A DNA stretch of 64,000 bases, from positions 1-64,000 of the IMG/VR virus record IMGVR_UViG_3300029908_000004. The stretch is one strand, 5' to 3'. The notes below the pieces were generated by a model. It searched no databases. It saw only the letters and a program-made list of their open reading frames with translations, and was not told the origin of the DNA. Both the position numbers and the translations under genes were made by a program. Position 1 is the stretch's first letter; each line of letters starts with the position of its first letter. Of this stretch, positions 29,599 through 46,689 are shown in pieces.

Positions 29599-29675
29599 TG
29601 GTGCCCATGACTAGATTCAAACTAGCACCCTCTGTCTTCGGAGGACAGTGCTCTATTCATTTGAGCTACACGGGC
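29599..29675 (-). tRNA. tRNA-Arg(CCG)
   Basis: CTGTC-CT CCG AA-GACAG; CCA. Confidence 0.92.
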
Positions 29676-33889: not shown

Positions 33890-33900
33890 AATAAACAGCT

Positions 33901-33986
33901 TGGCTGGGAAGGAGGGACTCGAACCCACACGTCTTTCGACACTGGTTCCAAAGACCAGCGCGTCTAATCCATTTCGCCACTTCCCA
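33901..33986 (-). tRNA. tRNA-Gln(TTG) with a long variable arm
   Basis: CTGGT-CT TTG GA-ACCAG; U1-A72, G73; variable arm TGTCGAAAGACG. Confidence 0.85.
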
Positions 33987-34177
33987 ATTATTAAGGCTTC
34001 TCGCCTTTCTTCACTACTACTACAGTGAGAGGTCTATTATTCCCAAGTGCAGAGAACCTTTTCCTCTGTAAGTCTTCTAAACTACCTTCTACTATTGGTT
34101 CTGGCTTAGCAGTAGGTTCAAAGTGAACCACCTTCTTCTTCTTTTCCCTAGCCTTCTTCTTCATACACCTTCCTAAT

Positions 34178-34252
34178 TGGTAGCACTAATGAGCTTCGAA
34201 CTCATATTCTCACTGTGAAGGAGTGGCGACCTAACCCTTAGTCGATAGTGCT
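34178..34252 (-). tRNA. tRNA-Glu(TTC), C33 variant
   Basis: CCACT-CC TTC AC-AGTGA; CCA. Confidence 0.8.
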
Positions 34253-34255
34253 ATA

Positions 34256-34846
34256 TTAATGTTTCTTAACTTCTTTCACATTGACGCTGCTAACATCTAT
34301 ATCTTTAGGACACCAATTAAAGACTGGGCTTTTAGACACTTCATTTAACGCCATCATTTGGGCATGTCCTGCGTTATACGCACTTTTTATTATTACCAAA
34401 CGTGAGATAGTAGTCATTGTTTCTACAGTCACATAGTAATCACCAGTTTCCTCTGTGATTCCCATTTCTTCAAGGACACTGTTCGCCCAGTTAACTTCCT
34501 TATCAGTTGCTGTGGTAGCAGTGAACTCGAAGTAATGATCAGGAATATATTGACACTTGGGAAACTGTTCCCTAGTACGTCTCACAATTAATCTTTGATG
34601 TGGATGAGTCTTAGGATAGACATGTTCGTCTGTTGTTAAATTAGACGTCCCACTTGTATCAGACCAGTTCCAACTACTACGTGATTTACTTTTCATGAAA
34701 AATATAACTTTTACAGACTTCACCTTATGATTAATGGTGTTACCTATCGTAAGATTTAAGTCCAATATTGCCAGAGCTTTCACTCTCTTTTGTATCTCTG
34801 TACCTATCTTGATACGTTCTTCTTCAGTCATTCTTGCTATTGCCAT
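34256..34846 (-). CDS. Hypothetical protein
   Basis: 196-aa ORF with SD. Confidence 0.7.
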   Translation of the reverse strand: MAIARMTEEERIKIGTEIQKRVKALAILDLNLTIGNTINHKVKSVKVIFFMKSKSRSSWNWSDTSGTSNLTTDEHVYPKTHPHQRLIVRRTREQFPKCQYIPDHYFEFTATTATDKEVNWANSVLEEMGITEETGDYYVTVETMTTISRLVIIKSAYNAGHAQMMALNEVSKSPVFNWCPKDIDVSSVNVKEVKKH

Positions 34847-34861
34847 GATTTCCTTTGTATC

Positions 34862-34938
34862 TGGTGGTGCTAGTGAGATTCTAACTCACATTCTGTATCT
34901 TGAGAGGATACCTACCTATCCAGTTAGTAGATAGCACC
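34862..34938 (-). tRNA. tRNA-Glu(CTC)
   Basis: GTATC-CT CTC AA-GATAC; T loop TTAGAAT; CCA. Confidence 0.78.
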
Positions 34939-34950
34939 TTTTATAAGAAT

Positions 34951-35025
34951 TGGTAGTCCCGGTTGGAATTGAACCAACAACCTTTCCGTTATCAGCAGAA
35001 TGCTCCACCCTTGAGCTACGGAACT
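34951..35025 (-). tRNA. tRNA-Ile(GAT)
   Basis: TTCTG-CT GAT AA-CGGAA; CCA. Confidence 0.93.
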
Positions 35026-35256
35026 ACGAGATTAAATAATGCTGGGGACTTAAGTGTTATATCTAATTGGTAAATACCCTACATACACAGTAGTTAACTT
35101 ATTTAATTCCTCACAACAAATTGAGCAAGCGTTAACATAATAATAAATCTTAGGTTCATTGTTAAACGTACCCAAAGATTGTCTTACTATTTGTTTAGTC
35201 CCATTACACTTCCAACATATTCTTGAATGTATAGTTTTTCTATCGAACATAACTCT

Positions 35257-35330
35257 TGGCTCCGACCGGTGGATTCGAACTACCATAACAACTTCCAGAG
35301 AGTTGTGTCCTACCATTAAACGAGGTCGAA
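35257..35330 (-). tRNA. tRNA-Gln(CTG)
   Basis: CAACT-CT CTG GA-AGTTG; U1-A72; G73; CCA. Confidence 0.88.
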
Positions 35331-35933
35331 TTAATTCTTTAACACAGCCCAAGCGTTTACTAATGTTTCAAATGTTTCTTCTACCCTAGTAATCTTAGAA
35401 ACTCTTGGTACTTCCTTAAGATCTTTTATAGCTTCCTCATGGGCTAGCAAAGCTTCTAGTAGCCTCTGATCAACTTCAGAACGCCTGTCAAGTGCTATTA
35501 CCTCTGGCTTCATACCTCTATCCATTGCTAGATTAGCTAATGAATCGGCATGTTTATTCTGTTCTCTAGGTACCCACTTCAATGTAAGATTAACTCCAAG
35601 CTTCTTCAGCTTGGCCATTCTAATACGGGCTGCTTTGTATAGCTCTAATAAGTCTACACTTTTAACATTCCAGTTACCGCTCAGTTGCTCGATTATTAGC
35701 TTGGAATCAGAGTGAACTACAACAATATTATAGTTCATTTCTATAGCATAATCCAGAGCTCTAATAAGTGCTGTGTACTCGGCATAGTTATTACTTTTAT
35801 CTTTAAGATAGTCGCTCTTCTCAAGGATACAAGTCTTCTTATTACCCTCTACAAGTATACCTGATACGCCTATCCCTGCTGCTCCCGGGTTAGCTCTTGA
35901 ACCACCATCACAGTAGAGCCAAAGCTCAGGCAT
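35331..35933 (-). CDS. rnhA: Ribonuclease HI
   Basis: YCDGGSRANPG.AGIG...NNYAEYTAL...HSDSKL...WVPREQNKHADSLAN. Confidence 0.93.
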   Translation of the reverse strand: MPELWLYCDGGSRANPGAAGIGVSGILVEGNKKTCILEKSDYLKDKSNNYAEYTALIRALDYAIEMNYNIVVVHSDSKLIIEQLSGNWNVKSVDLLELYKAARIRMAKLKKLGVNLTLKWVPREQNKHADSLANLAMDRGMKPEVIALDRRSEVDQRLLEALLAHEEAIKDLKEVPRVSKITRVEETFETLVNAWAVLKN

Positions 35934-35952
35934 CTTGTACCTCTACTTTCCT

Positions 35953-36026
35953 TGGAGAGATGTATCGGGTTCGAACCGATGATTACGCGTTGGCAACGCA
36001 TTATTTTGCCCCTAAATTAACATCTC
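35953..36026 (-). tRNA. tRNA-Gly(GCC)
   Basis: ATGCG-TT GCC AA-CGCGT; U73; CCA. Confidence 0.8.
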
Positions 36027-36282
36027 GTATCTGTTCTACACTAAACTTAGATTTAAGGCGTATGACACCCTCTAAATCTGTAGTAAATTTAAAGAAGATC
36101 CCACGTCTATTCAATTTATCTATTAGGGTATCGATATGTATTTTACGAGATTCATCATCCCCACCAACATGGCTTATTACATCACGTAATGTACGTATCT
36201 CATCATAACTAAGTACAATAGAATAGAGTTCTACATTAGAATCAGCCTTAGAACGGAAGATATTTATCCTTGTACTCTTCAT
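36001..36282 (-). CDS. Tandem paralog family (RINIF...VGG...R) member 1
   Basis: LRDVISHVGG; similar to the ORFs at 36331 and 36533. Confidence 0.6.
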   Translation of the reverse strand: MKSTRINIFRSKADSNVELYSIVLSYDEIRTLRDVISHVGGDDESRKIHIDTLIDKLNRRGIFFKFTTDLEGVIRLKSKFSVEQIRDVNLGAK

Positions 36283-36330
36283 GATTAAGCCTCAGTGAAG
36301 TATATGGAATCCTTCATATCCTCTCATCCA

Positions 36331-36555
36331 CTATTGTAGATACCACTTTGAAATTCGTATGTTATCAACATACTTCCTACGACTTGTAATAGCAGACCCA
36401 CCAACAGACCCCAGTATATCACGTAATACTTGCGCTTCTTCGAAGTTGAGGGTTATAGTGTAGTAGGTTGTTTCATTAGGTATGCTTATACGAATGGAAT
36501 TGAATACATTTATTCTTATATGTTTCATAATGTTACCTGAAATAAATAGCGCCAA
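36331..36555 (-). CDS. Tandem paralog family member 2
   Basis: RINVF...LRDILGSVGG...SRRKYVD. Confidence 0.55.
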   Translation of the reverse strand: MALFISGNIMKHIRINVFNSIRISIPNETTYYTITLNFEEAQVLRDILGSVGGSAITSRRKYVDNIRISKWYLQ

Positions 36556-36796
36556 AATCCATATCAGATCTTCTGCGTCCGACGTTATCTTTTATTCCAC
36601 TTGCGTCAAGGCTTCTTAGTACCTCATCGGCATAGCACCTTCGAGTGGTGCGAGGGCCGCCGACACTCATTAAGATATCAAACAAAGTCTCAGCTTGCTT
36701 AGTATTCAACTTCAGTATAATAGGAGCTTCTTCTTTCACAGGTCTATTATTCTGCAAAAATATATTCAATCTATCGGTTAAATGTGGATTTTCCAT
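36533..36796 (-). CDS. Tandem paralog family member 3
   Basis: RLNIF...LFDILMSVGG...TRRCYAD. Confidence 0.55.
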   Translation of the reverse strand: MENPHLTDRLNIFLQNNRPVKEEAPIILKLNTKQAETLFDILMSVGGPRTTRRCYADEVLRSLDASGIKDNVGRRRSDMDFGAIYFR

Positions 36797-37029
36797 TTGT
36801 GTCCGTTTTTACAAGAACCAACCTTCGTTTTGGTTTGACATACGACTTGTGGATTCGTTTCAGGACGAGCTGGGTTACATGATGCGGGGGACTCACTTGG
36901 ACAATGAGGACAGTAGCTAACTATTCTCATTCTACCTCTTGCTCCTCCCGGGGAACTATGCGCTCTACCATTCATTTGTTTCAACTTACGTTTCGTAACC
37001 GTTGAATGTTTAACTACCCCTGCTGCCAT
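36778..37029 (-). CDS. Small Cys-containing hypothetical protein
   Basis: CPHC...C...CKNGH. Confidence 0.5.
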   Translation of the reverse strand: MAAGVVKHSTVTKRKLKQMNGRAHSSPGGARGRMRIVSYCPHCPSESPASCNPARPETNPQVVCQTKTKVGSCKNGHKWKIHI

Positions 37030-37056
37030 ATTTTCCTTCCCTGTGTTAAGTCATAC

Positions 37057-37191
37057 GGATATAGTTTGAACAAGATGTTTTTCGATGCTACCATTACACC
37101 AAGCTGGCATAAATTATTAAATGGTGCCAGCCCTGGGATTTGAACCCAGACCCGTTCGTTATGAGTGAAGATAACCTTGCTCTGTCGACCC
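37057..37191 (-). ncRNA. YrlA-like Y RNA 1 (permuted tRNA-like domain)
   Basis: GGGTCGA-N8-GGTTATC, then T arm CTGGG-TTCAAAT-CCCAG, acceptor GGCTGGC/GCCAGCT closed by a loop, D arm GTGT-AATGGTA-GCAT, and 3' CTTGTTCAAACTATATCC pairing with the 5' end. Confidence 0.85.
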
Positions 37192-37214
37192 GTATGATTT
37201 GAATTTAATGATGA

Positions 37215-37348
37215 GGATATGGGGTGGAATTGGGTAAGCCTTTCGGCTGACGGATGTTCTACCATTTGAACTACATCCACTCGATTGAATGGAAGATTGG
37301 ACTCGAACCAATAACATTCTGTTTGAGATAACCAATTTCTATCGACCC
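37215..37348 (-). ncRNA. YrlA-like Y RNA 2
   Basis: GGGTCGA-N8-GGTTATC; ATTGG-TTCGAGT-CCAAT; acceptor hairpin; GTTC-AAATGGTA-GAAC; 3' CCAATT...ATATCC. Confidence 0.85.
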
Positions 37349-37359
37349 TCATCTAATAC

Positions 37360-37824
37360 TTATTGTGTAGCTTCCTTTTCGTTCCTTGATGGTGAGGTGC
37401 ACTCCTTGCGCGTGTTGGCCACCATCTCCTCGTACATGTGACCAAGCTGCTCTGATTCTTGGGCATGAGCTTCTGCCACTTCATCTACCACTACAGCTTC
37501 TGCCTGTGGTTGAGTACGTGGTGTCTTCAGCCAAAGAAGAGCAGCTTCCTGCGTACGCTGTGGGAACTTATCGTAACACAAGATTGCAGAAAGGATATTT
37601 ACTTTGATATCCCCTTCAACCTTTACAGTATCAGAGAGCCAGCTACCATTGGTCAGTCTTGATACAGCGATATGACGCCCCAACTTCTTGTTGAAACAAT
37701 CCTTTGGGTTGTGTGTGGAAACGGCGAAGATAGCTTCGTCTTCGGTCTGGGTATAAGCAACGCAAGCAACGGGGAAGCGATTCTCGTTGCGAAGAGAAAA
37801 TACCTTTACTGTTGGTTCAGTCAT
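37360..37824 (-). CDS. Conserved phage hypothetical protein
   Basis: 154 aa with SD; FAVSTHNPKDCFNKKLGRHIA motif. Confidence 0.65.
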   Translation of the reverse strand: MTEPTVKVFSLRNENRFPVACVAYTQTEDEAIFAVSTHNPKDCFNKKLGRHIAVSRLTNGSWLSDTVKVEGDIKVNILSAILCYDKFPQRTQEAALLWLKTPRTQPQAEAVVVDEVAEAHAQESEQLGHMYEEMVANTRKECTSPSRNEKEATQ

Positions 37825-37846
37825 ACTACTTCTCCTTTGGGGTTAA

Positions 37847-37920
37847 TGGTGGGACTAGGAGGAGTCGGACCTCCCTCGACGAATTAAGAATCCGCTGCAT
37901 GGCCGATGTGCTATAATCCC
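37847..37920 (-). tRNA. tRNA-Lys(CTT)
   Basis: GCGGA-TT CTT AA-TTCGT; CCA. Confidence 0.85.
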
Positions 37921-38119
37921 TTATTGTTTAGTCCTGTACTGCTATCACGTATTCTAAGAGACCTATTAGATCCTGAGCTATGCTTTTTAGCATAGCGGCT
38001 CCAACAACATCTCCTTTTTCTCGTAAATGTTTATCTAACAGCTCAAATCCATTGACAAACATTTCCGCTTGAGCTTCTGCTTCTTCTTGGGTTAACTCTG
38101 GCATATCATATCCTTTGTA

Positions 38120-38197
38120 TGGTGGCTAGAGAGGGAGTTGAACCCCCGACACACGGATTTTCGGTCCGCTGCTCTACCGAGACTGAGCTATCTAGCC
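38120..38197 (-). tRNA. tRNA-Phe(GAA), C33 variant
   Basis: GCGGA-CC GAA AA-TCCGT; CCA. Confidence 0.9.
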
Positions 38198-38380
38198 ATA
38201 TTTAAACTACGATTTTCTGTTAAGGAATCGTTCTAACACTACGAAAATAATGAACATAACTAATACTAAAACAATAGTCATAATTACCTTTATGTATTAA
38301 GTCTTATGTTGTAGTAGTTATAGTACAGATTCTGGATGGGCCTGAGGTCTAGAATTTATAACTACAACTACTACAAGCTC

Positions 38381-38899
38381 TTACAAGCTCTGGCGTTGGG
38401 AGATAGGTACTGCTGAGTTACATAACCACAAAGGTAAGTAGTCTGTTATACCTACTAGCCTAGAACTTTCTATTGGTTCTGTACAAATAGCTGTTAGTAC
38501 TAGTCCATCTATTCCATATATCTTCGGATTCTGATCATGGAAGGCATGGATAGGTATAAAAGCTTTGTTTAATAATGTTACTACATGCCATAGTTCATCA
38601 CTATTTCTGGCACCTAGTATCACTGTTGTAATAGGTATTATATCATCGGCCCTAGAGAATTTCATTAAACTAATAAGTCCTGGAGCGATACCCTTCTTCT
38701 TTCCCTTAGTTCTAGCATTATGTTCTTGAACTCTATCTAGGGAAACTCTCATCTTAGATACGACATGAGCTACTTGAGCAGCCGCTCTACCCCAATCTTG
38801 AGGTATGGTTCTACGAATTCTACGTGTAGTAAGGTGAGAAAATATTTCTACTTGTACTGTCTCAGCAACCACTACTACTATTCTTTTCTCTTCTGTCAT
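38381..38899 (-). CDS. Peptidyl-tRNA hydrolase PTH2-like protein
   Basis: GRAAAQVAHV...VILGARNSDEL...HAFHDQN...LTAI...P...ITDYLPLW. Confidence 0.75.
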   Translation of the reverse strand: MTEEKRIVVVVAETVQVEIFSHLTTRRIRRTIPQDWGRAAAQVAHVVSKMRVSLDRVQEHNARTKGKKKGIAPGLISLMKFSRADDIIPITTVILGARNSDELWHVVTLLNKAFIPIHAFHDQNPKIYGIDGLVLTAICTEPIESSRLVGITDYLPLWLCNSAVPISQRQSL

Positions 38900-38901
38900 A
38901 T

Positions 38902-39111
38902 CTAATCCTTGAAGGAAGAAGGAGAGTCAGATATTATTATTTCTGTTGGTGGTTCTACAGGATAAGCATTTACCGCGTCAAGAATAAACTTCATTACATG
39001 ACTACGATCACAGGCAAGTCCAACTGGTTCTCCATCGGCTGAAATGATTTCCATTCCTTCTTGCTTCCATGGTCGTGGTGGTACCTTAGGTAGTCGTATT
39101 GTTCTACTCAT
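38902..39111 (-). CDS. Hypothetical protein
   Basis: 69-aa ORF. Confidence 0.5.
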   Translation of the reverse strand: MSRTIRLPKVPPRPWKQEGMEIISADGEPVGLACDRSHVMKFILDAVNAYPVEPPTEIIISDSPSSFKD

Positions 39112-39127
39112 AAATCCTTTGAAGTAA

Positions 39128-39156
39128 TGGCGGTAGAGAGGAGAGTCGAACTCCTA
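39128..39156 (-). pseudogene. Orphan tRNA 3' end (Ser-like, G73)
   Basis: TTAGGAGTTCGACTCTCCTCTCTACCGCCA, just downstream of tRNA-Ser(TGA). Confidence 0.6.
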
Positions 39157-39181
39157 AGTCCGGTTAGGGTACTATAGTTTA

Positions 39182-39274
39182 TGGAGGAAGCGGTCCGATT
39201 CAAACGGACGGACCCCATCATTGGGCATCGGAAGTTTTCAGGACTTCTGCATTAGTTCGCTCTGCCACGCTTCC
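39182..39274 (-). tRNA. tRNA-Ser(TGA), C33 variant
   Basis: GAAGT-CC TGA AA-ACTTC; long variable arm; CCA. Confidence 0.87.
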
Positions 39275-39397
39275 AATAACCGGTAACCTCTGTTTCTAAC
39301 TGAAAATTGGACCCCTCAGTTATGCGTCGGACTAGCTAGAACGAGTTGATGCTACGCCCCATCACCGGTTACTACAACAACTCTAATTACTTATAAT

Positions 39398-39485
39398 TGG
39401 AGGAAGGAGAGGGAGTCAGACTCTCAAGTCCCTTACGGGCACCCTGAGTTTCTAGCTCAGTTGGCTTATCGATGCCTACCCTTCC
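39398..39485 (-). tRNA. tRNA-Ser(AGA)-like, degenerate D and T loops
   Basis: CTGAG-CT AGA AA-CTCAG; long variable arm; GGAAGGG/TCCTTCC-T-CCA. Confidence 0.6.
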
Positions 39486-39859
39486 TTTAATTCTAATTTC
39501 TTACAATTACATTCATTACATGCAGAATTATCATAATTATGAGACCAATAGAAATGTCCACAAATACATGTGTCTATTCCTATTGACATGAATGGTGTTA
39601 TTTGATGAAGAAGCACTTGATCTTGTTTCAAGAACCTATATAGAGAAGATCGCTTCTCTGTTCGACATCTTTTTGCATTAGGATTAAGTATTGTATGCAT
39701 CAAATCTAACAAATCTAATCCTAATGTTCTAGAACCACAGAACTTTTTATCCTTACTAACTTTCTTTAACAAGTGTAAGGCTAAAGTATCCCTGTCCTCT
39801 TGTGGTAATTGTATACGCTTCTGACTATAAAAATTCGCTAATATCTCTAATCTTTTCAT
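39476..39859 (-). CDS. Hypothetical protein (paralog of the ORF at 40414)
   Basis: LALHLL...TILNP...LKQDQVLLHQITPF...CICGH. Confidence 0.6.
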   Translation of the reverse strand: MKRLEILANFYSQKRIQLPQEDRDTLALHLLKKVSKDKKFCGSRTLGLDLLDLMHTILNPNAKRCRTEKRSSLYRFLKQDQVLLHQITPFMSIGIDTCICGHFYWSHNYDNSACNECNCKKLELKEG

Positions 39860-40167
39860 GGTGTTATAGATGTTATCTTTGGTAGAGTTGGTAGTTCTCT
39901 AGGTGATAGTGTTGGTAAACAAGGTTCATGTAATACTAATGTGGGCTGGATAAGGAGCGTCTTGTTCTTAGAGAATCGTTTGTAATATTCGATCCAAATA
40001 GCAGCATCCTGATTGGAACTTTCTAAAGCTGCATCCCAAACAAGGCTACATTCAGCCCAATGTCCGTGCCCAACGAACCCTGTGACACCTTCCATCCAAA
40101 CCACTCTGCACTTATTTTTGGCGAACGCAGAAGAACATAGTAGAAGTATAATTAATAGTTTTTTCAT
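39856..40167 (-). CDS. Secreted hypothetical protein
   Basis: Signal peptide MKKLLIILLLCSSAFA. Confidence 0.6.
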   Translation of the reverse strand: MKKLLIILLLCSSAFAKNKCRVVWMEGVTGFVGHGHWAECSLVWDAALESSNQDAAIWIEYYKRFSKNKTLLIQPTLVLHEPCLPTLSPRELPTLPKITSITP

Positions 40168-40493: not shown

Positions 40494-40926
40494 GAGGTTT
40501 CTCCCTAGAACCCAGACTTGATTTTGAGCTCTTCACACTTACCCTTGGCTTTACCGCGTGTTCACAACCAGTGCACTTCCATTTTTTACCTATGTAATCA
40601 TGATTAAAGGATATATGCCCACATTCACAATATGGATCGTAATCACATATGAAAGGGCTTAGTTGTCCTAATAACACTGGGTCGTCTTTCTTTAGCTGAC
40701 GGATAAAGTTAGATTGTTTAAATAATAAAACTTTACTCTGTGTTGGATCTAGTATAGCCCTCGTCGTCTCTGCTAAGTCTTTTATAGAGGCGTTGGTGTC
40801 CCAGATATGCTCGTTGGTTAAAGACCACTTGAACAAGAATAACGCTAAGGCTTCCCTAAGTGCAGTGTCCATTACTATAGTCTGTTTACTATAGTCTTCC
40901 ATAATTTGTTGATATTTAGATTTCAT
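40414..40926 (-). CDS. Hypothetical protein (paralog of the ORF at 39476)
   Basis: ALALFL...AILDP...LKKDDPVLLGQLSPF...CECGH. Confidence 0.6.
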   Translation of the reverse strand: MKSKYQQIMEDYSKQTIVMDTALREALALFLFKWSLTNEHIWDTNASIKDLAETTRAILDPTQSKVLLFKQSNFIRQLKKDDPVLLGQLSPFICDYDPYCECGHISFNHDYIGKKWKCTGCEHAVKPRVSVKSSKSSLGSREKPHEQTKYAQLSSTSMGESSWVYIREAC

Positions 40927-40936
40927 AATATATGTT

Positions 40937-40966
40937 TGGAGCTATCGAAGAGTCTCGAACTCTTGA
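40937..40966 (-). pseudogene. Degenerate tRNA 3' part
   Basis: AAGAG-TTCGAGA-CTCTT-CGATAGC-T-CCA with no matching 5' acceptor or D arm. Confidence 0.5.
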
Positions 40967-41006
40967 GTTTTATTTGTAGATTAAAATTGTAGCTGAACTC
41001 CCTCAA

Positions 41007-41270
41007 CTATAAAACCATTATCTTGTCACATTCAGCTTTGTTCTTTTCTTCTTTTAGTCTTGCATCTTCTACAAGGAATGGAAGATATAATCGTTCGGCA
41101 TATTCTAGCTTAGCATTTAGCTGGGCTATTTTGTAGTTGTACGCCTCTACTTCAAGGATATCCGGGCCTACTACACTCCATGCACTAGGATTATATAATT
41201 CTCTTATTTCTTTACGACAGTTAACTATCGTTGTTCCTAATTCTTTTCTTATTGATTCAAGTGTCCACAT
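41007..41270 (-). CDS. Hypothetical protein
   Basis: 87-aa ORF. Confidence 0.55.
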   Translation of the reverse strand: MWTLESIRKELGTTIVNCRKEIRELYNPSAWSVVGPDILEVEAYNYKIAQLNAKLEYAERLYLPFLVEDARLKEEKNKAECDKIMVL

Positions 41271-41277
41271 ATATGTA

Positions 41278-41301
41278 TGGAGCTGAGAGTCGTGATTGAA
41301 C
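41278..41301 (-). pseudogene. Orphan tRNA 3' end (Thr-like)
   Basis: GTTCAATCACGACTCTCAGCTCCA, downstream of tRNA-Thr. Confidence 0.55.
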
Positions 41302-41319
41302 GGACGCTAGCTTATAAGT

Positions 41320-41394
41320 TGGAGCTACCAGAGAGATTTGAACTCCCGATTGACTGATTACAGATCAGTTGCTGTTCCACTGAGCCATGGTAGC
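41320..41394 (-). tRNA. tRNA-Thr(TGT), C33 variant
   Basis: ACTGA-TC TGT AA-TCAGT; GCTACCA/TGGTAGC-T-CCA. Confidence 0.82.
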
Positions 41395-41426
41395 TAATAA
41401 GACTTTCCTTTTGGTGACCGGTGGGT

Positions 41427-41448
41427 TGGGGTGCATGATGGGAGTCGA
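41427..41448 (-). pseudogene. 3' fragment of the original tRNA-His
   Basis: TCGACTCCCAT-CATGCAC-C-CCA pairs at all 8 positions (one G-U) with the 5' fragment GGTGCGTG at 42278-42285. Confidence 0.8.
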
Positions 41449-41488
41449 TTGACACTTTCGACTAAGTTATTCTATACTATATAGTTAT

Positions 41489-42154
41489 ATGATAACCCTA
41501 AGTATGGAACAATTTACCAAACTAAATAGTCGCTCACCAGTAGAATGTAAATGTGAACAATGTAACAGTCTTTTCTACAGAGTAAAACATGATTTACAGA
41601 CAGCTATTCGTAGGAAAGAACCAATATCATTTTGTTCGCCGAAGTGTTATGGTTTATACAGAAACACTAAGACTACTGTCAAATGTTTATGGTGTAAGTC
41701 TGAAGTAGTTAGAATACCAACTACTAAGAATGTCTTCTGTTCGAGATCGTGTTCTGCAAAATATAATAACACACATAAAACATTTGGGACTAGAAGATCG
41801 AAACTTGAGAGATTTCTAGAAGAACAAATAAAATTATCGTACCCCAATTTGGAGCTTATATGCAATAGCAAATCAGTCATCGGTTCAGAGTTAGATTTCT
41901 ATTTCCCGAGGCTCAGATTGGCGATAGAACTCAATGGTATTCTGCACTACGAACCAATCTATGGGACAGATAAATTCTCTAAAATTGTTGACAATGATAG
42001 ACAAAAAGTTAGATTATGTGAAGCTATGGGTATTGAGCTAGCAGTTATTAATTCTTCGTCATGTTCACGCATGAGCGCAGTATTTAAAACTAAGTATTTG
42101 GGGATAACACGTGAATTAATAGACTCTGTTATTGATAGAGGAAATTTGGGGTAG
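41489..42154 (+). mobile_element. Antisense PD-(D/E)XK/Vsr-like homing endonuclease gene with zinc fingers (HEG4)
   Basis: ELDFYFPRLRLAIELNGILHY; CSPKC/CSRSC repeats; TTGACA-18nt-TATACT promoter at 41449-41478. Confidence 0.8.
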
Positions 42155-42221
42155 ATAGAGAGGTTCAAACTCTCGCTAAGGGAGCCACAGACCCTCGTGC
42201 TTTCATTACACTATACCTACC
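42147..42221 (-). tRNA. tRNA-His(GTG), replacement copy
   Basis: G-1:C73; AGGGT-CT GTG GC-TCCCT; CCA. Confidence 0.88.
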
Positions 42222-42244
42222 ATACTAAAAACTCCGTCGTCAGA

Positions 42245-42285
42245 GGTGCCACAGACCAGCGCCTCACCGTTTGGCTTCACGCACC
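42245..42285 (-). pseudogene. 5' fragment of the original tRNA-His
   Basis: GGTGCGTGAAGCCAAACGGTGAGGCGCTGGTCTGTGGCACC. Confidence 0.8.
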
Positions 42286-42288
42286 ATG

Positions 42289-43393
42289 TTAATATTTTGA
42301 AAGTTGTTCCATATTTCTATGTACTATTGACTTATTTGTTAGTTTAACATAACAGTAACCCGGATTACTGGAATAGTACATAACCTTACCTACCCGACCC
42401 CTCAGATTATCATTGTCACCTATGAGTATTACGTCATCACTAATATTTAGCTTGGGGAGTATTGGATTAGTCCAAATTATTATACGATCAATGTTATACC
42501 TTTTTGGCAATGGAACTCAAATATTCTATACAATCTTTGTCAAGTTCTACTGCGTATTGATAAGCAAACAAAGCTAATACGTGGGACAGCCTTTGTTCAT
42601 TATCAGTCCCTTCATGTCTTATAACTAAATCCCTTATACCGCCTCGCTTTAAGAAAGATTCTGCTTCTTTTATTAACTTACCTTCTAAAACTGTGGTAGG
42701 AAATGGTTCGCCTAGTCTCCACATATCTATCCTATATTCTCTCCAGAAATTCTTCTGGGACACAATATACCTTTGAATTAAAGAATGCATCATAGTACTC
42801 AACATAATAGTTACAATTTAAGTTGATTGGACCATTGTATGTAGGAGAGTAGGTACGAGAACATATAATCTTTACTAGTGAGTGTGATGGTATTTGTGTA
42901 TATCCTGTTTTCGTTAACGCGAAGGCACCATAACGAAAGGGTTCAGGCTTGATTAATATACATATCCTATCCATGGCACGCCCTCTCTAACTGTTCAGCC
43001 GCCACCAAGAGACACCTTCCTGTCCGTAATTCTTCAATCAAGAAAAGAATATTACTAATACTATCATTGAGGGGAAATTGTACTATAAAAATACTGCCTT
43101 TATTAGGTCCACTTATAAAAGTTACTGCTTCTCCAGCTTCCAGTTTGGTAGGTCTTGGACCATTATATAAACAAATTCTATCCATATCACAATCTTTCTA
43201 TATACTTAGATGGAATAATATACCTCTGGCCATTTCTTATGATTTCACAGCATTCATCATTTAAATATATGAGGCCCTTTAGATAAATGTCTGTTATTAC
43301 CCCAGTAAATTCATAGCCAGATCCTGCTCGTACGTTTACTCTAAGACCAACTTCAAGATTCTTCGGTATATGCCAGATACACATACGGTCCAT
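42289..43393 (-). other. Tandem array of small DRIC/DRMC-motif paralogs (42289-42510, 42732-42974, 42967-43185, 43187-43393) plus an unrelated ORF at 42494-42805
   Basis: N-termini IDRIIIW, MDRICIL, MDRICLY and MDRMCIW; SH3/KOW-like beta pattern; ends E(Q)LS/LERI/LERA/IERL. Confidence 0.65.
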
Positions 43394-43591
43394 AGCATGC
43401 CTCTGGTTACCTCTTTTGCAAGTCCTTAATCAGTGAGTTTAAGGCTTTATTCTCGAAGAAACCAGAAGGATCAAATTCTAGTTCAGCAACTGTGTCGTCC
43501 TGTAAGTAGAAGATTTGTGTCTTACCTTGGGTGTTCTTTACGATCTTGATATGTCCTGTCCATAGTGTCTGTTCATCCATAATTATCTCCT

Positions 43592-43667
43592 TGGAGCTAC
43601 CGCCGGGGATCGAACCCGGGACCTCTACTATACCAAAGTAGCACTCTACCGACTGAGCTACAGTAGC
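43592..43667 (-). tRNA. tRNA-Thr(GGT)
   Basis: CTACT-TT GGT AT-AGTAG; CCA. Confidence 0.93.
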
Positions 43668-44042
43668 TTATACTTCATTCCTTGATTCCAATTCGTCAAC
43701 AACAGTTCGTTCTTTATTAGCATGAACTGGCTTTTTATTAATCTTTACTTTATCTATATTAATCTTCTGAAGACAGGCTATTATTCGCTTCTTGTCTGAA
43801 TCAACTTTTTTCATAGCAGCTTCGACTTGTCCTTGTATCTTATTAACTTCAGACTGTCGCTGCTCCAGATTCTTCTCGGCTTGCGCGAAGCTGGCAAGTG
43901 CCCGTTTATTTTCGTAATCCAGATTTGCTATTTCACTTAAATGAGATTGGATACTATCCAACATTCTCCTACCCGTTGGATCGATGATCCTGTCAAGGAT
44001 TGATCCTTTCGCTACACTTTTCTTTACTATCTTTTTCATCAT
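43668..44042 (-). CDS. Coiled-coil hypothetical protein
   Basis: 124-aa ORF. Confidence 0.6.
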   Translation of the reverse strand: MMKKIVKKSVAKGSILDRIIDPTGRRMLDSIQSHLSEIANLDYENKRALASFAQAEKNLEQRQSEVNKIQGQVEAAMKKVDSDKKRIIACLQKINIDKVKINKKPVHANKERTVVDELESRNEV

Positions 44043-44178
44043 TGTGCCACCGCCTCTGAAAATGTAAGAATCGAAATTAGTGAATCTGGAAAAATAAGTG
44101 CTATACCACTAAATCTGAAGATTAAAGAAGAGCTTTTTTGTCTCGCGTGTTGACTTTAGGACAACCTCTCTAGTTAGC

Positions 44179-44514
44179 TTACTTAGGCAACTTACCCTTG
44201 CTTCTAAGCTTTTCTTCAGATTCATCAAATTCGTGTTTTAGCTGTTGCCCCTGAACTGCCACTTTTACGCATAATTCCAAATATTCATCAAAATCTGACC
44301 AGTAGTCATAAGACATGGGTTCGGATTTACGACCAGAGGTGTAAGTTACAACTATATTAGGGGAACCATACACCCCGTTTTTCTTTATTTCTGTTATAAC
44401 ACCATTTTTTGTAGGATAACACGTCTTGTAAACACGTTTACCAATTTTCAACTGGTCATTTTTTATGTGAGCTCTGCTTTTCAGAATTACTTGTGATGGA
44501 AGAAGTTTTGCCAT
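44179..44514 (-). CDS. Hypothetical protein
   Basis: 111-aa ORF. Confidence 0.6.
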   Translation of the reverse strand: MAKLLPSQVILKSRAHIKNDQLKIGKRVYKTCYPTKNGVITEIKKNGVYGSPNIVVTYTSGRKSEPMSYDYWSDFDEYLELCVKVAVQGQQLKHEFDESEEKLRSKGKLPK

Positions 44515-44559
44515 AAACTAGAAACCTTTTGTCTATACTATATAATAGTGAGGTGATCA

Positions 44560-44781
44560 ATGAACGATAATTTGATTAAAATCTGCCGTAAATGTAAAAT
44601 CCCTAAAGATCGTGACGAATTCCCGTGGAAGAACAAATCCAAAGGAATTCGCCATAATACTTGTAAGCATTGTACACGGGACTATAGTGAAAACTATTAC
44701 AAGTCAAATCAAAATGAACTATCAGAGAAAGCTAAACTACACCAAAGGGAGAAAAGAGCTGCTAAACCAAATGTGGTTTAA
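44560..44781 (+). pseudogene. Truncated antisense homing endonuclease (N-terminal zinc finger only; HEG5)
   Basis: KICRKCKIPK...EF...TCKHC; promoter TATACTATATA at 44534-44544 and SD GAGGTG; no nuclease domain. Confidence 0.65.
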
Positions 44782-46502
44782 GCTTCTAATTCCTTCTCTC
44801 GTGGTTCAGCATCATAGCTATCAATAGACAGTTTCATGTCCTCAGAGAACTTTATAGCCACTTCTACTGATCTCTTGATATCTCCTATTCTAATCTCACG
44901 ACCATTATCTGCCCGAGCTAGTGTTTGTGACAAACGGATGGCATTTTTGATTTGTCGTCCGTTTAGATTATAAACACTCATCTCTTTCGACCACTGTGCA
45001 TTCATTTTGGCCGCTTCTAGTAGGTTGTACCAGATTTTCTCTCTCTTTTCCTGTCCGTTGTTACAGAAATGAAGTGCTACAGAGATGCGGCTATAAAATG
45101 CCTTATCAATATTCTTGACACGATTGGTGGTAAGGAAAAGTACTCCGTTGTGATATTCTAGCAAACGAAGGAAAACACCAACCATAGCATTTCTTTCGAT
45201 GTCGTGCTCATCACGAGCTTCCAAGAAGATATCTGCCTCATCCAGAAGGATAACAGCATCCCAAATCGTTGCTACCTCCAAGATATTGCGTAAATGAGAT
45301 TCCAAGTGTTCTGTATCTGTTCCCAATTCTCCTACTGAGACTGAATACAGTGGCTTGTGAAGAATTTCTGCAACTGCTTCAGCAGAAGCAGTTTTACCTA
45401 ACCCCGGTTCTCCATGAAGCAGGAAGATGCAGCCTCCACCTTTACCTTCAATGATATCGGTGAATCCGCCACCATGGTATTTAACCAGAGAGTAAATCAA
45501 ATCCTTACTGTCTTGATCCAACACCAGTCGATCAAAAGCATCCTCACGGAAATTGATCTCGCTCAAGCCAGAAAGTCTTAGACGTCCCCATTCCTTAACT
45601 TGTAAGCTAAACCCCAGAAGATATGGATAACAGCGCCAATAGTCTTCTTCTTTTAACTTGGTTTCATCTTTTTGGGTAACTTCTACTTCATCGTCGTCTT
45701 CCAAATTGATACCCAACATACGTCCACATTGGCCCCAAACGTCAGGTTTTAATCTGGAGAAGGAAACTGGATCGATTACCACACGACCAGAAGCTCTCGT
45801 TATCTTGTTCCCGAGCCAACTTGGTGATATCATGTTGCCTTCGTAATGAAGGTACCTACCCGGTTTAGACATTGATAGAATCTTCTCTCCACGTTCGGAC
45901 ATGGACTTCTTCTCAGAGTCAGTGACCAACCGAATTGGTAACGAACTAATTGGTACGCTACCCGGGAATCCGTTTATTCCGAATGAATAATCATTCTCCA
46001 CGATTTTGCCGCATAACCCATGTATAACCCTTAGGGAGATCCTGAATACAGGACCCATCCATGTATAATCTATTCTTGACTTCCTGACGATACCACCAAT
46101 GGCTTCTTCCCCTTGGATAACAACTTCTTTCTCTTCTGGGAAATATCTTATCATATCGTTAAGGGTAAGAACTCCGTTATCGATTCTTGCTAAGAATAAT
46201 TTCTCTAACAATTCCCCCATCGACTGAATATATTTATAAAGGTCTTTACCCTTTTTGTCAGTTTTCAGCGATGTCCCCTCGTTTGATACATAGCCGTGAT
46301 AAAACTGACACAATACATAGATAGGGTATCTATGACGATATATAATTGCGGCTTCGTAATCCCATACTTTTGTTAGATCGCTAAACACTAAAGTCTTTAT
46401 ATATTGGTCTTTAACAGATCGGAAACAGACCACTTCTTCACCAGAAATATCAAGAATTGTGTAGAAGTCTGTTGCATTAATTAATTTCTCTGCGATTTCC
46501 AT
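44778..46502 (-). CDS. AAA+ ATPase
   Basis: LLHGEPGLGKTASAEAVAE, ILLDEADIFLE, LFLTTNRV..IDKAFYSRI; start placed at MEIAEK because the longer frame overlaps two tRNAs. Confidence 0.88.
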   Translation of the reverse strand: MEIAEKLINATDFYTILDISGEEVVCFRSVKDQYIKTLVFSDLTKVWDYEAAIIYRHRYPIYVLCQFYHGYVSNEGTSLKTDKKGKDLYKYIQSMGELLEKLFLARIDNGVLTLNDMIRYFPEEKEVVIQGEEAIGGIVRKSRIDYTWMGPVFRISLRVIHGLCGKIVENDYSFGINGFPGSVPISSLPIRLVTDSEKKSMSERGEKILSMSKPGRYLHYEGNMISPSWLGNKITRASGRVVIDPVSFSRLKPDVWGQCGRMLGINLEDDDEVEVTQKDETKLKEEDYWRCYPYLLGFSLQVKEWGRLRLSGLSEINFREDAFDRLVLDQDSKDLIYSLVKYHGGGFTDIIEGKGGGCIFLLHGEPGLGKTASAEAVAEILHKPLYSVSVGELGTDTEHLESHLRNILEVATIWDAVILLDEADIFLEARDEHDIERNAMVGVFLRLLEYHNGVLFLTTNRVKNIDKAFYSRISVALHFCNNGQEKREKIWYNLLEAAKMNAQWSKEMSVYNLNGRQIKNAIRLSQTLARADNGREIRIGDIKRSVEVAIKFSEDMKLSIDSYDAEPREKELEA

Positions 46503-46519
46503 ACGAATTGTCCTTTTCT

Positions 46520-46595
46520 TGGAGCTGGTGACCGAAGTCGAATCGATAACCTCTACTTTACGAAAGTATTGCTCTTCCAATTGAGCTACACCAGC
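46520..46595 (-). tRNA. tRNA-Thr(CGT)
   Basis: TACT-TT CGT AA-AGTA; CCA. Confidence 0.88.
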
Positions 46596-46604
46596 GTTGA
46601 TATC

Positions 46605-46689
46605 TGGAGCGAGAGACGGGATTTGAACCCGCATGTCTTTCAACGGTAGCTTGGAAGGCTACTGACCAACCGAGTAGGTCATCTCCCGC
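46605..46689 (-). tRNA. tRNA-Gly(TCC) with a long variable arm
   Basis: GTAGC-CT TCC AA-GCTAC; variable region CGTTGAAAGACAT; U73; CCA. Confidence 0.82.

What the first reader, a model, noticed from the sequence alone, without database searches (positions are those of the whole stretch)
33901..46689. Long-variable-arm tRNA-Gln(TTG) and tRNA-Gly(TCC)
Seen: Gln (33901-33986) has U1-A72/G73 identity elements but a Leu-like D loop and a GTC-GAAA-GAC variable arm. Gly (46605-46689) has a similar GAAA-capped arm. Known: long variable arms are normally restricted to Leu, Ser, Tyr and Sec. Inference: chimeric bodies that may be mischarged (Ser or Leu at Gln or Gly codons) or may evade recognition by nucleases.
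Basis: partly seen in the sequence, partly recalled or inferred. Interest (0 to 1): 0.6.

Follow-up and report, generated by a model that had tools for sequence, protein, structure and literature searches.

The report
Extra-arm glutamine and glycine tRNAs in phages
A 215-kb peat phage carries glutamine and glycine tRNAs with an extra hairpin arm normally seen only in Leu/Ser/Tyr tRNAs; both belong to widespread, so far phage-only tRNA families that keep the marks for correct charging, so they look like working tRNAs with an altered shape, not mistranslators.

Summary
Window 33901-33986(-) is an 86-nt tRNA-Gln(UUG) and 46605-46689(-) an 85-nt tRNA-Gly(UCC). Each has a 3-bp, GAAA-capped variable arm.

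The window is the start of a complete 215-kb phage from peat. The phage has 31 tRNAs for all 20 amino acids and no GlnRS/GluRS, class IIa synthetase or GlyRS-alpha.

The Gln tRNA is a remoulded phage tRNA-Leu(UAG). It is 75-76% identical to Leu(UAG) of cultured phages but 40% to its own canonical Gln. The changes sit at Gln/Leu identity positions (1:72, 73, 35), plus a flipped 6:67 pair. The Gly tRNA is an ordinary Gly(UCC) body with a hairpin inserted in the variable loop.

Both belong to conserved families in many uncultivated phages: 18 distinct Gln and 10 distinct Gly sequences, with strong helix covariation. All 18 Gln have U1. Gly keeps G1-C72, C2-G71, G3-C70 and U73. No such tRNA was found in 185,579 cellular species (strict pattern) or 1,203 sampled genomes (loose pattern).

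CAA and GGA codons in the phage sit where homologues have Gln and Gly.

Mischarging is therefore not supported. Escape from nucleases remains plausible but untested. I found no prior description in the searchable literature.

The parts
33901..33986 (-). tRNA-Gln(UUG), 86 nt with encoded CCA. Class-II architecture: 3-bp D stem, long D loop, 13-nt variable region.
   Evidence: ARAGORN; Rfam RF00005 50.8 bits; 18-member family with covariation in all five helices.
33931..33940 (-). Variable-arm hairpin of tRNA-Gln: GUC-GAAA-GAC on the RNA strand.
   Evidence: Sequence. All three stem pairs covary across the family, e.g. GUC/GAC, GCC/GGC, ACC/GGU.
33949..33951 (-). Anticodon UUG of the extra-arm tRNA-Gln, in loop CUUUGGA (G37, A38).
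   Evidence: ARAGORN anticodon position 36; sequence.
46605..46689 (-). tRNA-Gly(UCC), 85 nt with encoded CCA. Class-I-type 4-bp D stem plus a 13-nt variable region.
   Evidence: ARAGORN; MFE fold is a 5-arm cloverleaf; tRNA clan hit at 36.4 bits; 10-member family with covariation.
46635..46644 (-). Variable-arm hairpin of tRNA-Gly: GUU-GAAA-GAC (G-C, U-A, U.G).
   Evidence: Sequence. Family variants include GUCGAAAGAC, GUCGAGAGAC, GUCUUUGAC, GACCUAGUC and AGCGAAAGCU.
46653..46655 (-). Anticodon UCC of the extra-arm tRNA-Gly, in loop CUUCCAA.
   Evidence: ARAGORN; sequence.
35257..35330 (-). Canonical 74-nt tRNA-Gln(CUG) of the same phage, used as the comparison partner. It is only 40% identical to the extra-arm Gln.
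35953..36026 (-). Canonical 74-nt tRNA-Gly(GCC) of the same phage.
26405..26481 (-). Reciprocal oddity: tRNA-Leu(UAG) of only 77 nt, with a class-I body, 5-nt variable loop, C1-G72 and A73.
   Evidence: ARAGORN; Rfam 58.8 bits.
29653..30042 (-). 129-aa cREC (cyclic-phosphate-processing receiver domain, PF20274) protein inside the tRNA array. Homologues lie in 7 of the loci that carry extra-arm Gln tRNAs.
   Evidence: Pfam E = 2.7e-20; single copy in the genome and no hit in 14 control genomes; clustering.

Best explanation
Both genes are working elongator tRNAs of a 215-kb phage. Host GlnRS and GlyRS most likely charge them with the cognate amino acids, and they read CAA(/CAG) and GGA(/GGG) in phage mRNAs.

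The Gln tRNA arose by alloacceptor remoulding of a phage tRNA-Leu(UAG). The class-II core was kept: the Leu-type D arm, the short variable hairpin, and the T arm with its U50.U64 mismatch. Nucleotide 35 changed A to U. The acceptor end changed at 1:72 (G-C to U-A) and 73 (A to G). These changes install Gln determinants and remove the Leu determinant A73. G2-C71, G3-C70 and G10 were already present.

The Gly tRNA is a normal bacterial-type Gly(UCC) body with a 10-nt hairpin inserted in the variable loop.

The extra arm is not an identity switch. It is a change of body shape that translation tolerates and that is kept only in phages. The most likely reason (inferred, not shown) is to make the phage's own tRNA a poor substrate for host tRNA-targeting defence nucleases or modifiers, while host synthetases still accept it.
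For: Shown:
- The gene calls and anatomy are sound.
- The Gln core is 80-81% identical to Leu(UAG) tRNAs from three unrelated phages, and no canonical Gln appears among the 14 nearest tRNAs.
- blastn against 50,697 phage records returns annotated tRNA-Leu genes. The two I fetched read anticodon UAG.
- Whole-tRNA identity is 76% and 75% to Leu(UAG) of Pseudomonas phage RVTF4 and Salmonella phage smaug, against 40% to the phage's own Gln(CUG). Acceptor and discriminator differences are confined to positions 1, 6, 67, 72 and 73.
- Among 18 distinct extra-arm Gln(UUG) tRNAs from phage contigs of 25-67% GC, 95.7% of cells pair, 19 of 23 pairs change on both sides, all three variable-stem pairs covary, and 0 of 500 shuffles reach these values.
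- All 18 have U1 (A72 in 13), like canonical Gln tRNAs in the same data (47 of 60 U-A) and unlike Leu tRNAs (G1 in 58 of 80; A73 in 73 of 80).
- Among 10 distinct extra-arm Gly(UCC) tRNAs, 94.6% of cells pair and 12 of 24 pairs change on both sides. G1-C72 and G3-C70 are in 10 of 10, C2-G71 in 9 of 10, and U73 in the nine rows whose 3' end is encoded.
- The phage has no GlnRS/GluRS, class IIa synthetase or GlyRS-alpha gene.
- CAA makes up 58% of Gln codons and GGA 27% of Gly codons.
- In RNR and RecD2 alignments, CAA columns fit Q best (31.7 against E 13.2; 6 of 8 conserved columns are Q). GGA columns fit G (68.3 against S 1.2; 14 of 16).
- The forms are phage-restricted in the scans made.
- The genome also carries a cREC protein, a CCA-adding enzyme, a Ro60 homologue and a ligase.

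From the literature:
- The Gln, Gly and Leu identity sets are reviewed in PMC9976931.
- A phage tRNA-Tyr resists PtuAB cleavage because of its distinct variable loop (PMC13096335).
- The AriB nuclease reads the tRNA body as well as the anticodon stem (PMC12409363).

From my own knowledge, not checked here: GlnRS approaches tRNA from the D-arm side, leaving the variable region exposed. E. coli GlnRS charges mutants of the class-II su+3 tRNA-Tyr.
Against: - No aminoacylation, expression or nuclease data exist. One metatranscriptome contig covers the Gln gene, but it could derive from DNA.
- A Leu-type body with G73 is the kind of change that turns some tRNA-Leu into serine acceptors (PMC9976931), so partial mischarging of the Gln tRNA cannot be excluded.
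- G37 and A38 differ from the E. coli Gln consensus.
- The host is unknown, so it is open whether it has GlnRS or uses GluRS plus an amidotransferase.
- GlyRS is a class II enzyme and may face the variable region, so tolerance of the arm is an assumption.
- The protective role of the arm is pure inference.
- For Gln, the arm could simply be inherited baggage from the Leu ancestor.
Confidence: 0.6

Rival explanations
1. Neutral relic. The tRNAs are cognate and functional, but the extra arm has no role of its own. In Gln it is left over from the Leu ancestor. In Gly it is a harmless insertion that spread with mobile tRNA cassettes among phages.
For: - The Gln arm is clearly inherited from tRNA-Leu(UAG).
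- LeuRS and GlnRS are not known to read the variable arm (PMC9976931).
- Arm sequences vary freely as long as they pair.
- HNH endonuclease genes lie beside such tRNAs in other contigs, which fits cassette mobility.
Against: - Extra arms occur on many class-I isoacceptors (Gly, Glu, Trp, Thr, Pro, Lys, Asn, Arg, Val) with class-I-type D arms, which implies repeated independent gains.
- The arm stems are kept by compensatory change.
- Several phages keep a canonical copy and an extra-arm copy with the same anticodon side by side.
- None was found in cellular genomes.
Confidence: 0.22
2. Deliberate or tolerated mistranslation. SerRS or LeuRS charges the class-II-like bodies, so Ser or Leu goes in at CAA, or a non-Gly residue at GGA. 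This would either harm the host or diversify proteins.
For: - The Gln tRNA has a Leu-type core, G73, G2-C71 and C11-G24.
- A73-to-G changes can convert some tRNA-Leu to Ser acceptors (PMC9976931).
- Nematode nev-tRNAs show that class-II tRNAs with Gly or Ile anticodons can be charged with Leu (PMC3333845).
- Six of the 18 family members have A73.
Against: - U1 is present in 18 of 18 Gln members, and the complete Gly identity set is conserved.
- The window's Gln tRNA lacks A73.
- The arm is only 3 bp, like Leu and Tyr arms and shorter than Ser arms.
- The Gly tRNA has U73, which is neither the Ser (G73) nor the Leu (A73) discriminator.
- The phage itself uses CAA and GGA heavily at positions conserved as Q and G, so it would damage its own proteins.
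Confidence: 0.08
3. The job is not in translation. The extra-arm tRNAs would act as decoys that soak up host tRNA-targeting nucleases, or as handles or substrates for phage enzymes (cREC, ligase, CCA-adding enzyme, Ro60), rather than as adaptors.
For: - Phage tRNA-Tyr has been proposed to act as a decoy or supplement (PMC13096335).
- tRNA maintenance genes are present.
- Canonical and extra-arm pairs occur in other phages.
Against: - In this phage they are the only tRNAs for UUG and UCC in an otherwise complete 20-amino-acid set.
- The anticodon loops, T loops, CCA ends and synthetase identity nucleotides are all conserved, which a pure decoy would not need.
Confidence: 0.07
4. They are pseudogenes or software artefacts.
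For: - The Gly gene misses Rfam's gathering score.
- The Gln MFE fold is not a cloverleaf.
Against: - Conservation and compensatory change across many phages support real genes.
- Both have encoded CCA and intact loops.
Confidence: 0.02

Closest known systems
Phage tRNA-Leu(UAG) of T5-like phages (e.g. Salmonella phage smaug, MT074461) and Pseudomonas jumbo phage RVTF4 (PQ015378)
   Same: Same D arm, the same T arm including the U50.U64 mismatch, a short variable hairpin and the same overall length. Identity to the window's Gln tRNA is 75-76%.
   Different: Those have anticodon UAG, G1-C72(U72) and A73. The window tRNA has UUG, U1-A72 and G73, which is a Gln rather than a Leu identity set.
Alloacceptor tRNA remoulding / anticodon shifts (mitochondria and eukaryotic nuclear genomes; PMC4783518, PMC3923123)
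   Same: A duplicated tRNA gene changes its anticodon and becomes more similar to another acceptor family than to its own isoacceptors.
   Different: Here the change happens in phage tRNA arrays, crosses the class II to class I boundary, and comes with targeted changes of acceptor-end identity nucleotides.
Nematode nev-tRNAs (class-II tRNAs with Gly or Ile anticodons; PMC3333845)
   Same: A long variable arm on tRNAs whose anticodons are not Leu, Ser or Tyr.
   Different: nev-tRNAs keep Leu identity and are charged with Leu. The phage tRNAs carry the cognate Gln and Gly identity nucleotides, and the window's Gln tRNA lacks A73.
T5 tRNA-Tyr that escapes retron-Eco7/Septu PtuAB (Azam 2024, cited in PMC13096335)
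   Same: A phage-encoded tRNA whose variable-loop difference from the host tRNA protects it from a defence nuclease. This is the precedent for the proposed role.
   Different: That case is a natural class-II tRNA with an altered arm. Here an arm is present on tRNAs that normally have none, and no nuclease has been linked to them.
Allo-tRNAs and tRNA-Sec (PMC5389517, PMC7609411)
   Same: A long variable arm and unusual anticodons.
   Different: Those have 8/4 or 9/3 acceptor/T-stem geometry and Ser identity. The window tRNAs have the canonical 7/5 geometry.
tRNA-Asn(GUU) of cultured cyanophage S-CBWM1 (MG450654)
   Same: An 86-nt class-I isoacceptor with a GAAA-capped 5-bp variable arm in a phage tRNA array. 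A 76-nt Leu(UAA) lies nearby.
   Different: It is a different isoacceptor, annotated simply as tRNA-Asn. No Gln or Gly counterpart was found in deposited phage genomes.

Membership tests
Elongator tRNA (cloverleaf, Rfam clan CL00001) | 7-bp acceptor stem, D arm, 5-bp anticodon stem with a 7-nt loop (U33, purine 37), 5-bp T stem with a GUUCRA loop, and a 3' CCA. | tested here: met
   ARAGORN structures. RF00005 scores Gln 50.8 bits. Gly scores 36.4 bits to a clan member, below that model's cut-off, but shows family covariation.
tRNA-Gln identity (GlnRS, or GluRS2/amidotransferase) | U1-A72 (weak first pair), G2-C71, G3-C70, G73, G10, U35, G36. | tested here: met
   All are present in 33901-33986. 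U1 is in 18 of 18 family members. The rule set comes from PMC9976931.
tRNA-Gln identity (GlnRS, or GluRS2/amidotransferase) | Class-I body (4-5 nt variable loop) and A37/U38 as in E. coli tRNA-Gln. | tested here: not met
   The variable region is 13 nt, with G37 and A38. The phage's canonical Gln(CUG) also has G37 and A38.
tRNA-Gln identity (GlnRS, or GluRS2/amidotransferase) | Actually charged with Gln. | not testable with these tools
   Only indirect evidence: CAA codons align with Q in homologues.
Bacterial tRNA-Leu (class II) | Leu-type D arm, core and long variable arm. | tested here: met
   The core is 80-81% identical to Leu(UAG) tRNAs, and blastn hits are annotated tRNA-Leu.
Bacterial tRNA-Leu (class II) | Discriminator A73 (the major LeuRS determinant) and a Leu anticodon. 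| tested here: not met
   G73 and UUG.
Bacterial tRNA-Gly identity | G1-C72, C2-G71, G3-C70, U73, C35, C36. | tested here: met
   All are present in 46605-46689 and conserved in 9-10 of 10 family members.
Bacterial tRNA-Gly identity | Short (4-5 nt) variable loop. | tested here: not met
   The variable region is 13 nt with a 3-bp hairpin.
tRNA-Ser identity (SerRS) | Long variable arm of Ser type (longer stem) together with G73. | tested here: not met
   Both arms have only 3 bp. The phage's own Ser tRNAs are 89 and 93 nt. Gly has U73 and Gln has G73. How SerRS actually responds was not testable.
Allo-tRNA / tRNA-Sec | 8/4, 9/3 or 8/5 acceptor/T-stem geometry. | tested here: not met
   The geometry is 7/5 in both. 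The Sec model scores below its gathering cut-off.
nev-tRNA-like missense tRNAs | Class-II body that keeps Leu identity (A73) while carrying a non-Leu anticodon. | tested here: not met
   The window's Gln has G73 and U1-A72; Gly has U73 and a class-I D arm.

The most novel reading that the evidence does not exclude
Large phages keep a 'second architecture' of tRNAs as a general counter-defence. Class-I isoacceptors (Gln, Gly, Glu, Trp, Thr, Pro, Lys, Asn, Arg, Val) are given an extra arm, and Leu and Ser are stripped of theirs. The phage's adaptors therefore no longer fit host tRNA-targeting immune nucleases or modifiers, or a phage-made host-shutoff tRNase, yet host synthetases still charge them. 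Some of these variants were made by switching identity between acceptor families, such as Leu(UAG) to Gln(UUG).
Probability: 0.3. Interest if true: 0.85.

Novelty: new variant of a known kind. Interest (0 to 1): 0.68.

Why it matters
Textbooks restrict the long variable arm in bacteria to Leu, Ser, Tyr and Sec tRNAs. Here that rule is broken systematically in phage tRNA arrays, and apparently only there.

The Gln case is a natural identity-switch experiment. A Leu tRNA was turned into a Gln tRNA by changes concentrated at positions 1:72, 73 and 35. This makes testable which synthetases tolerate an extra arm.

If the arm shields tRNAs from defence nucleases, it would be a new general tactic in the tRNA-centred arms race between phages and bacteria.

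The sequences are also ready-made candidates for orthogonal tRNA scaffolds. They also warn annotators that isotype and class mismatches in phage tRNAs are not necessarily pseudogenes.

Tried and rejected
- **Deposited phage genomes.** Megablast of window 33000-47000 against 50,697 phage records found nothing. A distant search of 44700-46700 hit only a tRNA-Thr in a 735-kb uncultured phage.
- **Gly in deposited phages.** blastn of the Gly tRNA found nothing. A Gly relative hit only canonical 73-76-nt tRNA-Gly genes.
- **Phage-encoded synthetases as users of the arm.** There is no PF00749, PF00587 or PF02091 in the genome. There is no RtcB either.
- **Homing endonucleases beside the two genes.** PHROGs found none in this phage, although HNH genes lie beside such tRNAs in other contigs.
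- **Codon reassignment.** Rejected: CAA fits Q, GGA fits G and CTA fits L.
- **tRNA-Sec or allo-tRNA.** Rejected on 7/5 geometry.
- **Single-sequence fold of Gln.** The MFE is not a cloverleaf and z is only -1.9. This is uninformative, so covariation was used instead.
- **RNA-library contigs.** Four peat metatranscriptome runs hold parts of 31000-36900. One contig covers 33765-33988 with no differences. Contigs cannot show a mature tRNA, and DNA carry-over is possible, so this is not counted as proof of expression.
- **Literature.** Searches found no description of extra-arm Gln or Gly tRNAs in phages. Subscription journals are not covered.
- **Not used.** I did not run the large protein-representative search, structure prediction or complex prediction, because no claim depended on them.

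Full report
**Observation**

ARAGORN finds 28 tRNA genes in the window, all on the minus strand. They include tRNA-Gln(ttg) at 33901-33986 (86 nt) and tRNA-Gly(tcc) at 46605-46689 (85 nt). Rfam's tRNA model scores the Gln gene 50.8 bits. The Gly gene is claimed within the tRNA clan by the tRNA-Sec model at 36.4 bits, below that model's cut-off of 47.

Read on the RNA strand, the Gln tRNA has:
- acceptor stem UGGGAAG/CUUCCCA, that is U1-A72, G2-C71 and G3-C70, with G73 and an encoded CCA;
- a 3-bp D stem with a 12-nt loop;
- anticodon loop CUUUGGA;
- a 13-nt variable region u-GUC-GAAA-GAC-gu;
- a T stem with a U50.U64 mismatch.

The Gly tRNA has:
- G1-C72, C2-G71, G3-C70, U73 and CCA;
- a 4-bp D stem;
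- anticodon loop CUUCCAA;
- variable region c-GUU-GAAA-GAC-au.

Its minimum-free-energy fold is a five-arm cloverleaf (z = -2.7).

**Genome context**

The window is the first 64 kb of a 215,291-bp IMG/VR virus record rated 100% complete, with about 40% GC. The whole genome has 30 ARAGORN tRNAs. One more, a tRNA-His(GUG) with G-1 at 42150-42220, is seen only by Rfam. All carry an encoded CCA and lie on one strand between small ORFs from 24 to 65 kb. Together they cover all 20 amino acids.

UUG and UCC are represented only by the extra-arm genes. Canonical Gln(CUG) and Gly(GCC) are also present.

The genome encodes:
- a class II ribonucleotide reductase, a RecD2 helicase, a split family-A DNA polymerase, a sliding clamp and a clamp loader;
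- a Ro60/TROVE protein;
- a CCA-adding enzyme, an ATP-dependent ligase and an adenylosuccinate-synthetase homologue;
- a cREC 'cyclic-phosphate processing receiver' protein inside the tRNA array.

It has no GlnRS/GluRS, class IIa synthetase, GlyRS-alpha or RtcB.

The DNA is found in peat and permafrost metagenomes from more than 20 studies.

**Origin of the Gln tRNA**

blastn of the 86-nt gene against 50,697 deposited phage genomes returns annotated tRNA-Leu genes of T5-like phages, and an unannotated site in Pseudomonas jumbo phage RVTF4. These match at 75-78% over nucleotides 2-81. ARAGORN reads both fetched examples as Leu(UAG).

In a joint alignment, the window's Gln tRNA compares as follows:

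| Compared with | Identity |
|---|---|
| Leu(UAG), Pseudomonas phage RVTF4 | 76% |
| Leu(UAG), Salmonella phage smaug | 75% |
| Leu(UAG), a 360-kb phage | 70% |
| Its own phage's Leu(UAA) | 53% |
| Its own phage's canonical Gln(CUG) | 40% |

With the acceptor stems removed, the nearest non-Gln tRNAs among 401 are all Leu. The T arm, including the U.U mismatch, is identical to that of the two cultured-phage Leu(UAG) genes.

In the acceptor stem and discriminator, the only differences from RVTF4 Leu are at positions 1, 6, 67, 72 and 73. The anticodon differs at position 35.

Positions 1:72, 73 and 35 are the ones that matter for Gln and Leu identity. According to the identity review PMC9976931:
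- E. coli Gln identity lies in the acceptor stem including the discriminator, the 10-25 pair, U35 and G36.
- U1-A72 is read by GluRS2 and the amidotransferases.
- Leu identity depends on A73 and core tertiary pairs, not on the anticodon or the long arm.

G2-C71, G3-C70 and G10 were already present in the Leu ancestor. This is alloacceptor remoulding, with the acceptor end re-tuned to the new anticodon.

**Origin of the Gly tRNA**

The D arm is of ordinary class-I type. A relative from another contig aligns end to end with canonical 76-nt tRNA-Gly genes of cultured phages once the arm is gapped out. The extra arm is therefore an insertion into the variable loop, not a borrowed class-II body.

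The 10-nt hairpin GUCGAAAGAC of the Gln tRNA is identical to the Gly hairpin of two other huge phages. Arm sequences in both families vary widely, so I read this as convergence on a stable GNRA hairpin.

**Both are members of conserved, phage-borne families**

A strict pattern required the anticodon loop, nine free bases, GAAA, seven free bases and the T loop. It found 13 places in IMG/VR, of which 12 are tRNAs.

Looser patterns found 10 distinct extra-arm Gly(UCC) tRNAs. They also raised the count of distinct extra-arm Gln(UUG) tRNAs to 18, from contigs of 25-67% GC.

| Measure | Gln family | Gly family |
|---|---|---|
| Cells that form a pair | 95.7% | 94.6% |
| Pairs changed on both sides | 19 of 23 | 12 of 24 |
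| Shuffles reaching these values | 0 of 500 | 0 of 500 |

For Gln, all three variable-stem pairs change on both sides. For Gly, the T arm was fixed by the search pattern, so its invariance is uninformative. Three Gly rows are misaligned in the arm because their stems sit in another register.

The acceptor end was not constrained by any pattern. Even so, all 18 Gln members start with U1 (A72 in 13, G in 2, U in 2, C in 1). This matches canonical Gln tRNAs in the same contigs (47 of 60 U-A). It differs from Leu tRNAs, which have G1 in 58 of 80 and A73 in 73 of 80. Gly members keep G1-C72 and G3-C70 in 10 of 10, C2-G71 in 9 of 10, and U73 in the nine rows whose 3' end is encoded.

**Not found in cells**

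The strict pattern with four extra T-loop bases was scanned over one genome for each of 185,579 bacterial and archaeal species. It gave three matches, none a tRNA. The loose Gln pattern over 1,203 genomes of three phyla gave seven matches, none a tRNA. These are pattern searches and samples, so rarity is shown, not absence.

**A wider phenomenon**

The same phage arrays hold extra-arm versions of Glu(UUC), Trp(CCA), Thr(UGU), Pro(UGG), Lys(UUU), Arg and Val tRNAs. Often these sit a few bases from a canonical copy with the same anticodon. The arrays also hold class-I-length Leu and Ser tRNAs.

The window has such a Leu(UAG) of 77 nt at 26405-26481.

The cultured cyanophage S-CBWM1 has an 86-nt tRNA-Asn with a GAAA-capped arm and a 76-nt Leu(UAA). 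Both are annotated without comment.

My sample was selected by these very features, so no frequency can be given.

**What the tRNAs decode**

In 92 ORFs of at least 200 codons, CAA is 58% of Gln codons and GGA is 27% of Gly codons.

The phage's ribonucleotide reductase and RecD2 were aligned to up to 45 distant homologues each:

| Codon | Sites | Best fit (BLOSUM sum) | Runner-up | Conserved columns |
|---|---|---|---|---|
| CAA | 24 | Q (31.7) | E (13.2) | 6 of 8 are Q |
| GGA | 23 | G (68.3) | S (1.2) | 14 of 16 are G |

CTA fits L. The genome is therefore written in the standard code at these codons. A tRNA that put Ser or Leu at CAA would damage the phage's own proteins. Together with the conserved identity nucleotides, this argues for cognate charging by host enzymes. 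No tool here can test charging directly.

**Why keep the arm**

What is shown:
- the arm is structurally conserved;
- it has appeared on many isoacceptors;
- in my scans it is confined to phages.

What is inferred: it changes the tRNA's shape so that host factors which attack tRNAs no longer fit. The supporting context is indirect.
- The PARIS nuclease AriB reads the tRNA body as well as the anticodon stem (PMC12409363).
- This phage carries cREC, ligase, CCA-adding and Ro60 genes, which suggests investment in tRNA maintenance.
- cREC homologues recur in 7 loci that carry extra-arm Gln tRNAs.

For Gln, a neutral-relic reading is a serious alternative.

**Expression**

Contigs from four peat metatranscriptome runs cover parts of 31000-36900. 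One spans 33765-33988, the whole Gln gene, without a difference. Contigs cannot show a mature tRNA, and DNA carry-over is possible.

**Comparison with what is known**

The nearest relatives by descent are phage tRNA-Leu(UAG) genes. The nearest by process is alloacceptor remoulding in mitochondria and eukaryotes (PMC4783518, PMC3923123). The nearest by appearance are the nematode nev-tRNAs, but those keep Leu identity (PMC3333845). Allo-tRNAs and tRNA-Sec are excluded by stem geometry.

Full-text searches found no description of extra-arm Gln or Gly tRNAs in phages. The library lacks most subscription journals.

**Verdict**

The 'chimera' reading is right for Gln. Mischarging is unlikely, and nuclease escape is plausible but untested. 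I rate this a new variant of a known kind, of clear interest to tRNA and phage-defence specialists.

Noticed in passing
window 26405-26481 (-): tRNA-Leu(UAG) of only 77 nt: class-I body, 5-nt variable loop, C1-G72 and A73 (a Pro-like acceptor end). Its D arm (ACGU-AAUUGGCAA-ACGU) nearly matches a 75-nt Leu(UAA) in another huge-phage contig (L023). 'Arm-less' Leu tRNAs therefore also look like a conserved phage family.
   Followed up: partly
window 42150-42220 (-): tRNA-His(GUG) with G-1, found by Rfam (50 bits) but missed by ARAGORN. It completes a 20-amino-acid set of 31 tRNAs.
   Followed up: partly
window 29653-30042 (-): 129-aa cREC (cyclic-phosphate-processing receiver, PF20274) protein inside the tRNA array. 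Homologues lie next to extra-arm Gln tRNAs in six other phage loci, and none was found in 14 control genomes. It may belong to a tRNA-repair route without RtcB.
   Followed up: partly
window 56987-58687 (-): Ro60/TROVE plus vWA protein (Rsr-like) among the tRNA genes. No Y RNA was found at Rfam gathering scores. A weak YrlA-like hit at 46543-46654 merely overlaps two tRNAs.
   Followed up: no
L025:15996-17249 (-) = genome 79996-81249: Adenylosuccinate-synthetase homologue (PF00709, E = 4e-55) in a phage. This could be a PurZ-type enzyme for 2-aminoadenine DNA. Not examined.
   Followed up: no
L025:9310-10836 (-) = genome 73310-74836; L026:489-2135 (-): A CCA-adding tRNA nucleotidyltransferase and an ATP-dependent ligase with a weak RNA-ligase signal. 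These are further tRNA-maintenance candidates.
   Followed up: no
window 1247-2236 (-) and 4251-5570 (-): The family-A DNA polymerase appears split into two ORFs about 2 kb apart. One holds the exonuclease plus the N-terminal polymerase part, the other the C-terminal polymerase part.
   Followed up: no
whole genome (G000): TGA ends only 4 of 92 long ORFs (TAA 61, TAG 27). No suppressor tRNA was seen, and I did not test for another code.
   Followed up: no
L018-L020 (360-kb contig), L024, L021-L023, L022: Other huge phages keep canonical and extra-arm copies with the same anticodon side by side: Gly 74/83, Glu 75/84, Thr 75/83, Trp 74/87 and Gln 75/86 nt. The 360-kb phage also has CUA and UUA suppressor tRNAs.
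   Followed up: partly
L163:3397-3482 (+), Synechococcus phage S-CBWM1 MG450654: A cultured phage has an 86-nt tRNA-Asn(GUU) with a GCGGC-GAAA-GCUGC variable arm and a 76-nt Leu(UAA). Both are annotated without remark.
   Followed up: partly
L021, L023, L010 (Pro(UGG) of 95-97 nt): Extra-arm tRNA-Pro(UGG) with a 7-8-bp Ser-like arm, C1-G72 and A73. Its anticodon arm differs from a phage Leu(UAG) only at nucleotide 35, which suggests a second Leu-to-Pro style remoulding.
   Followed up: no
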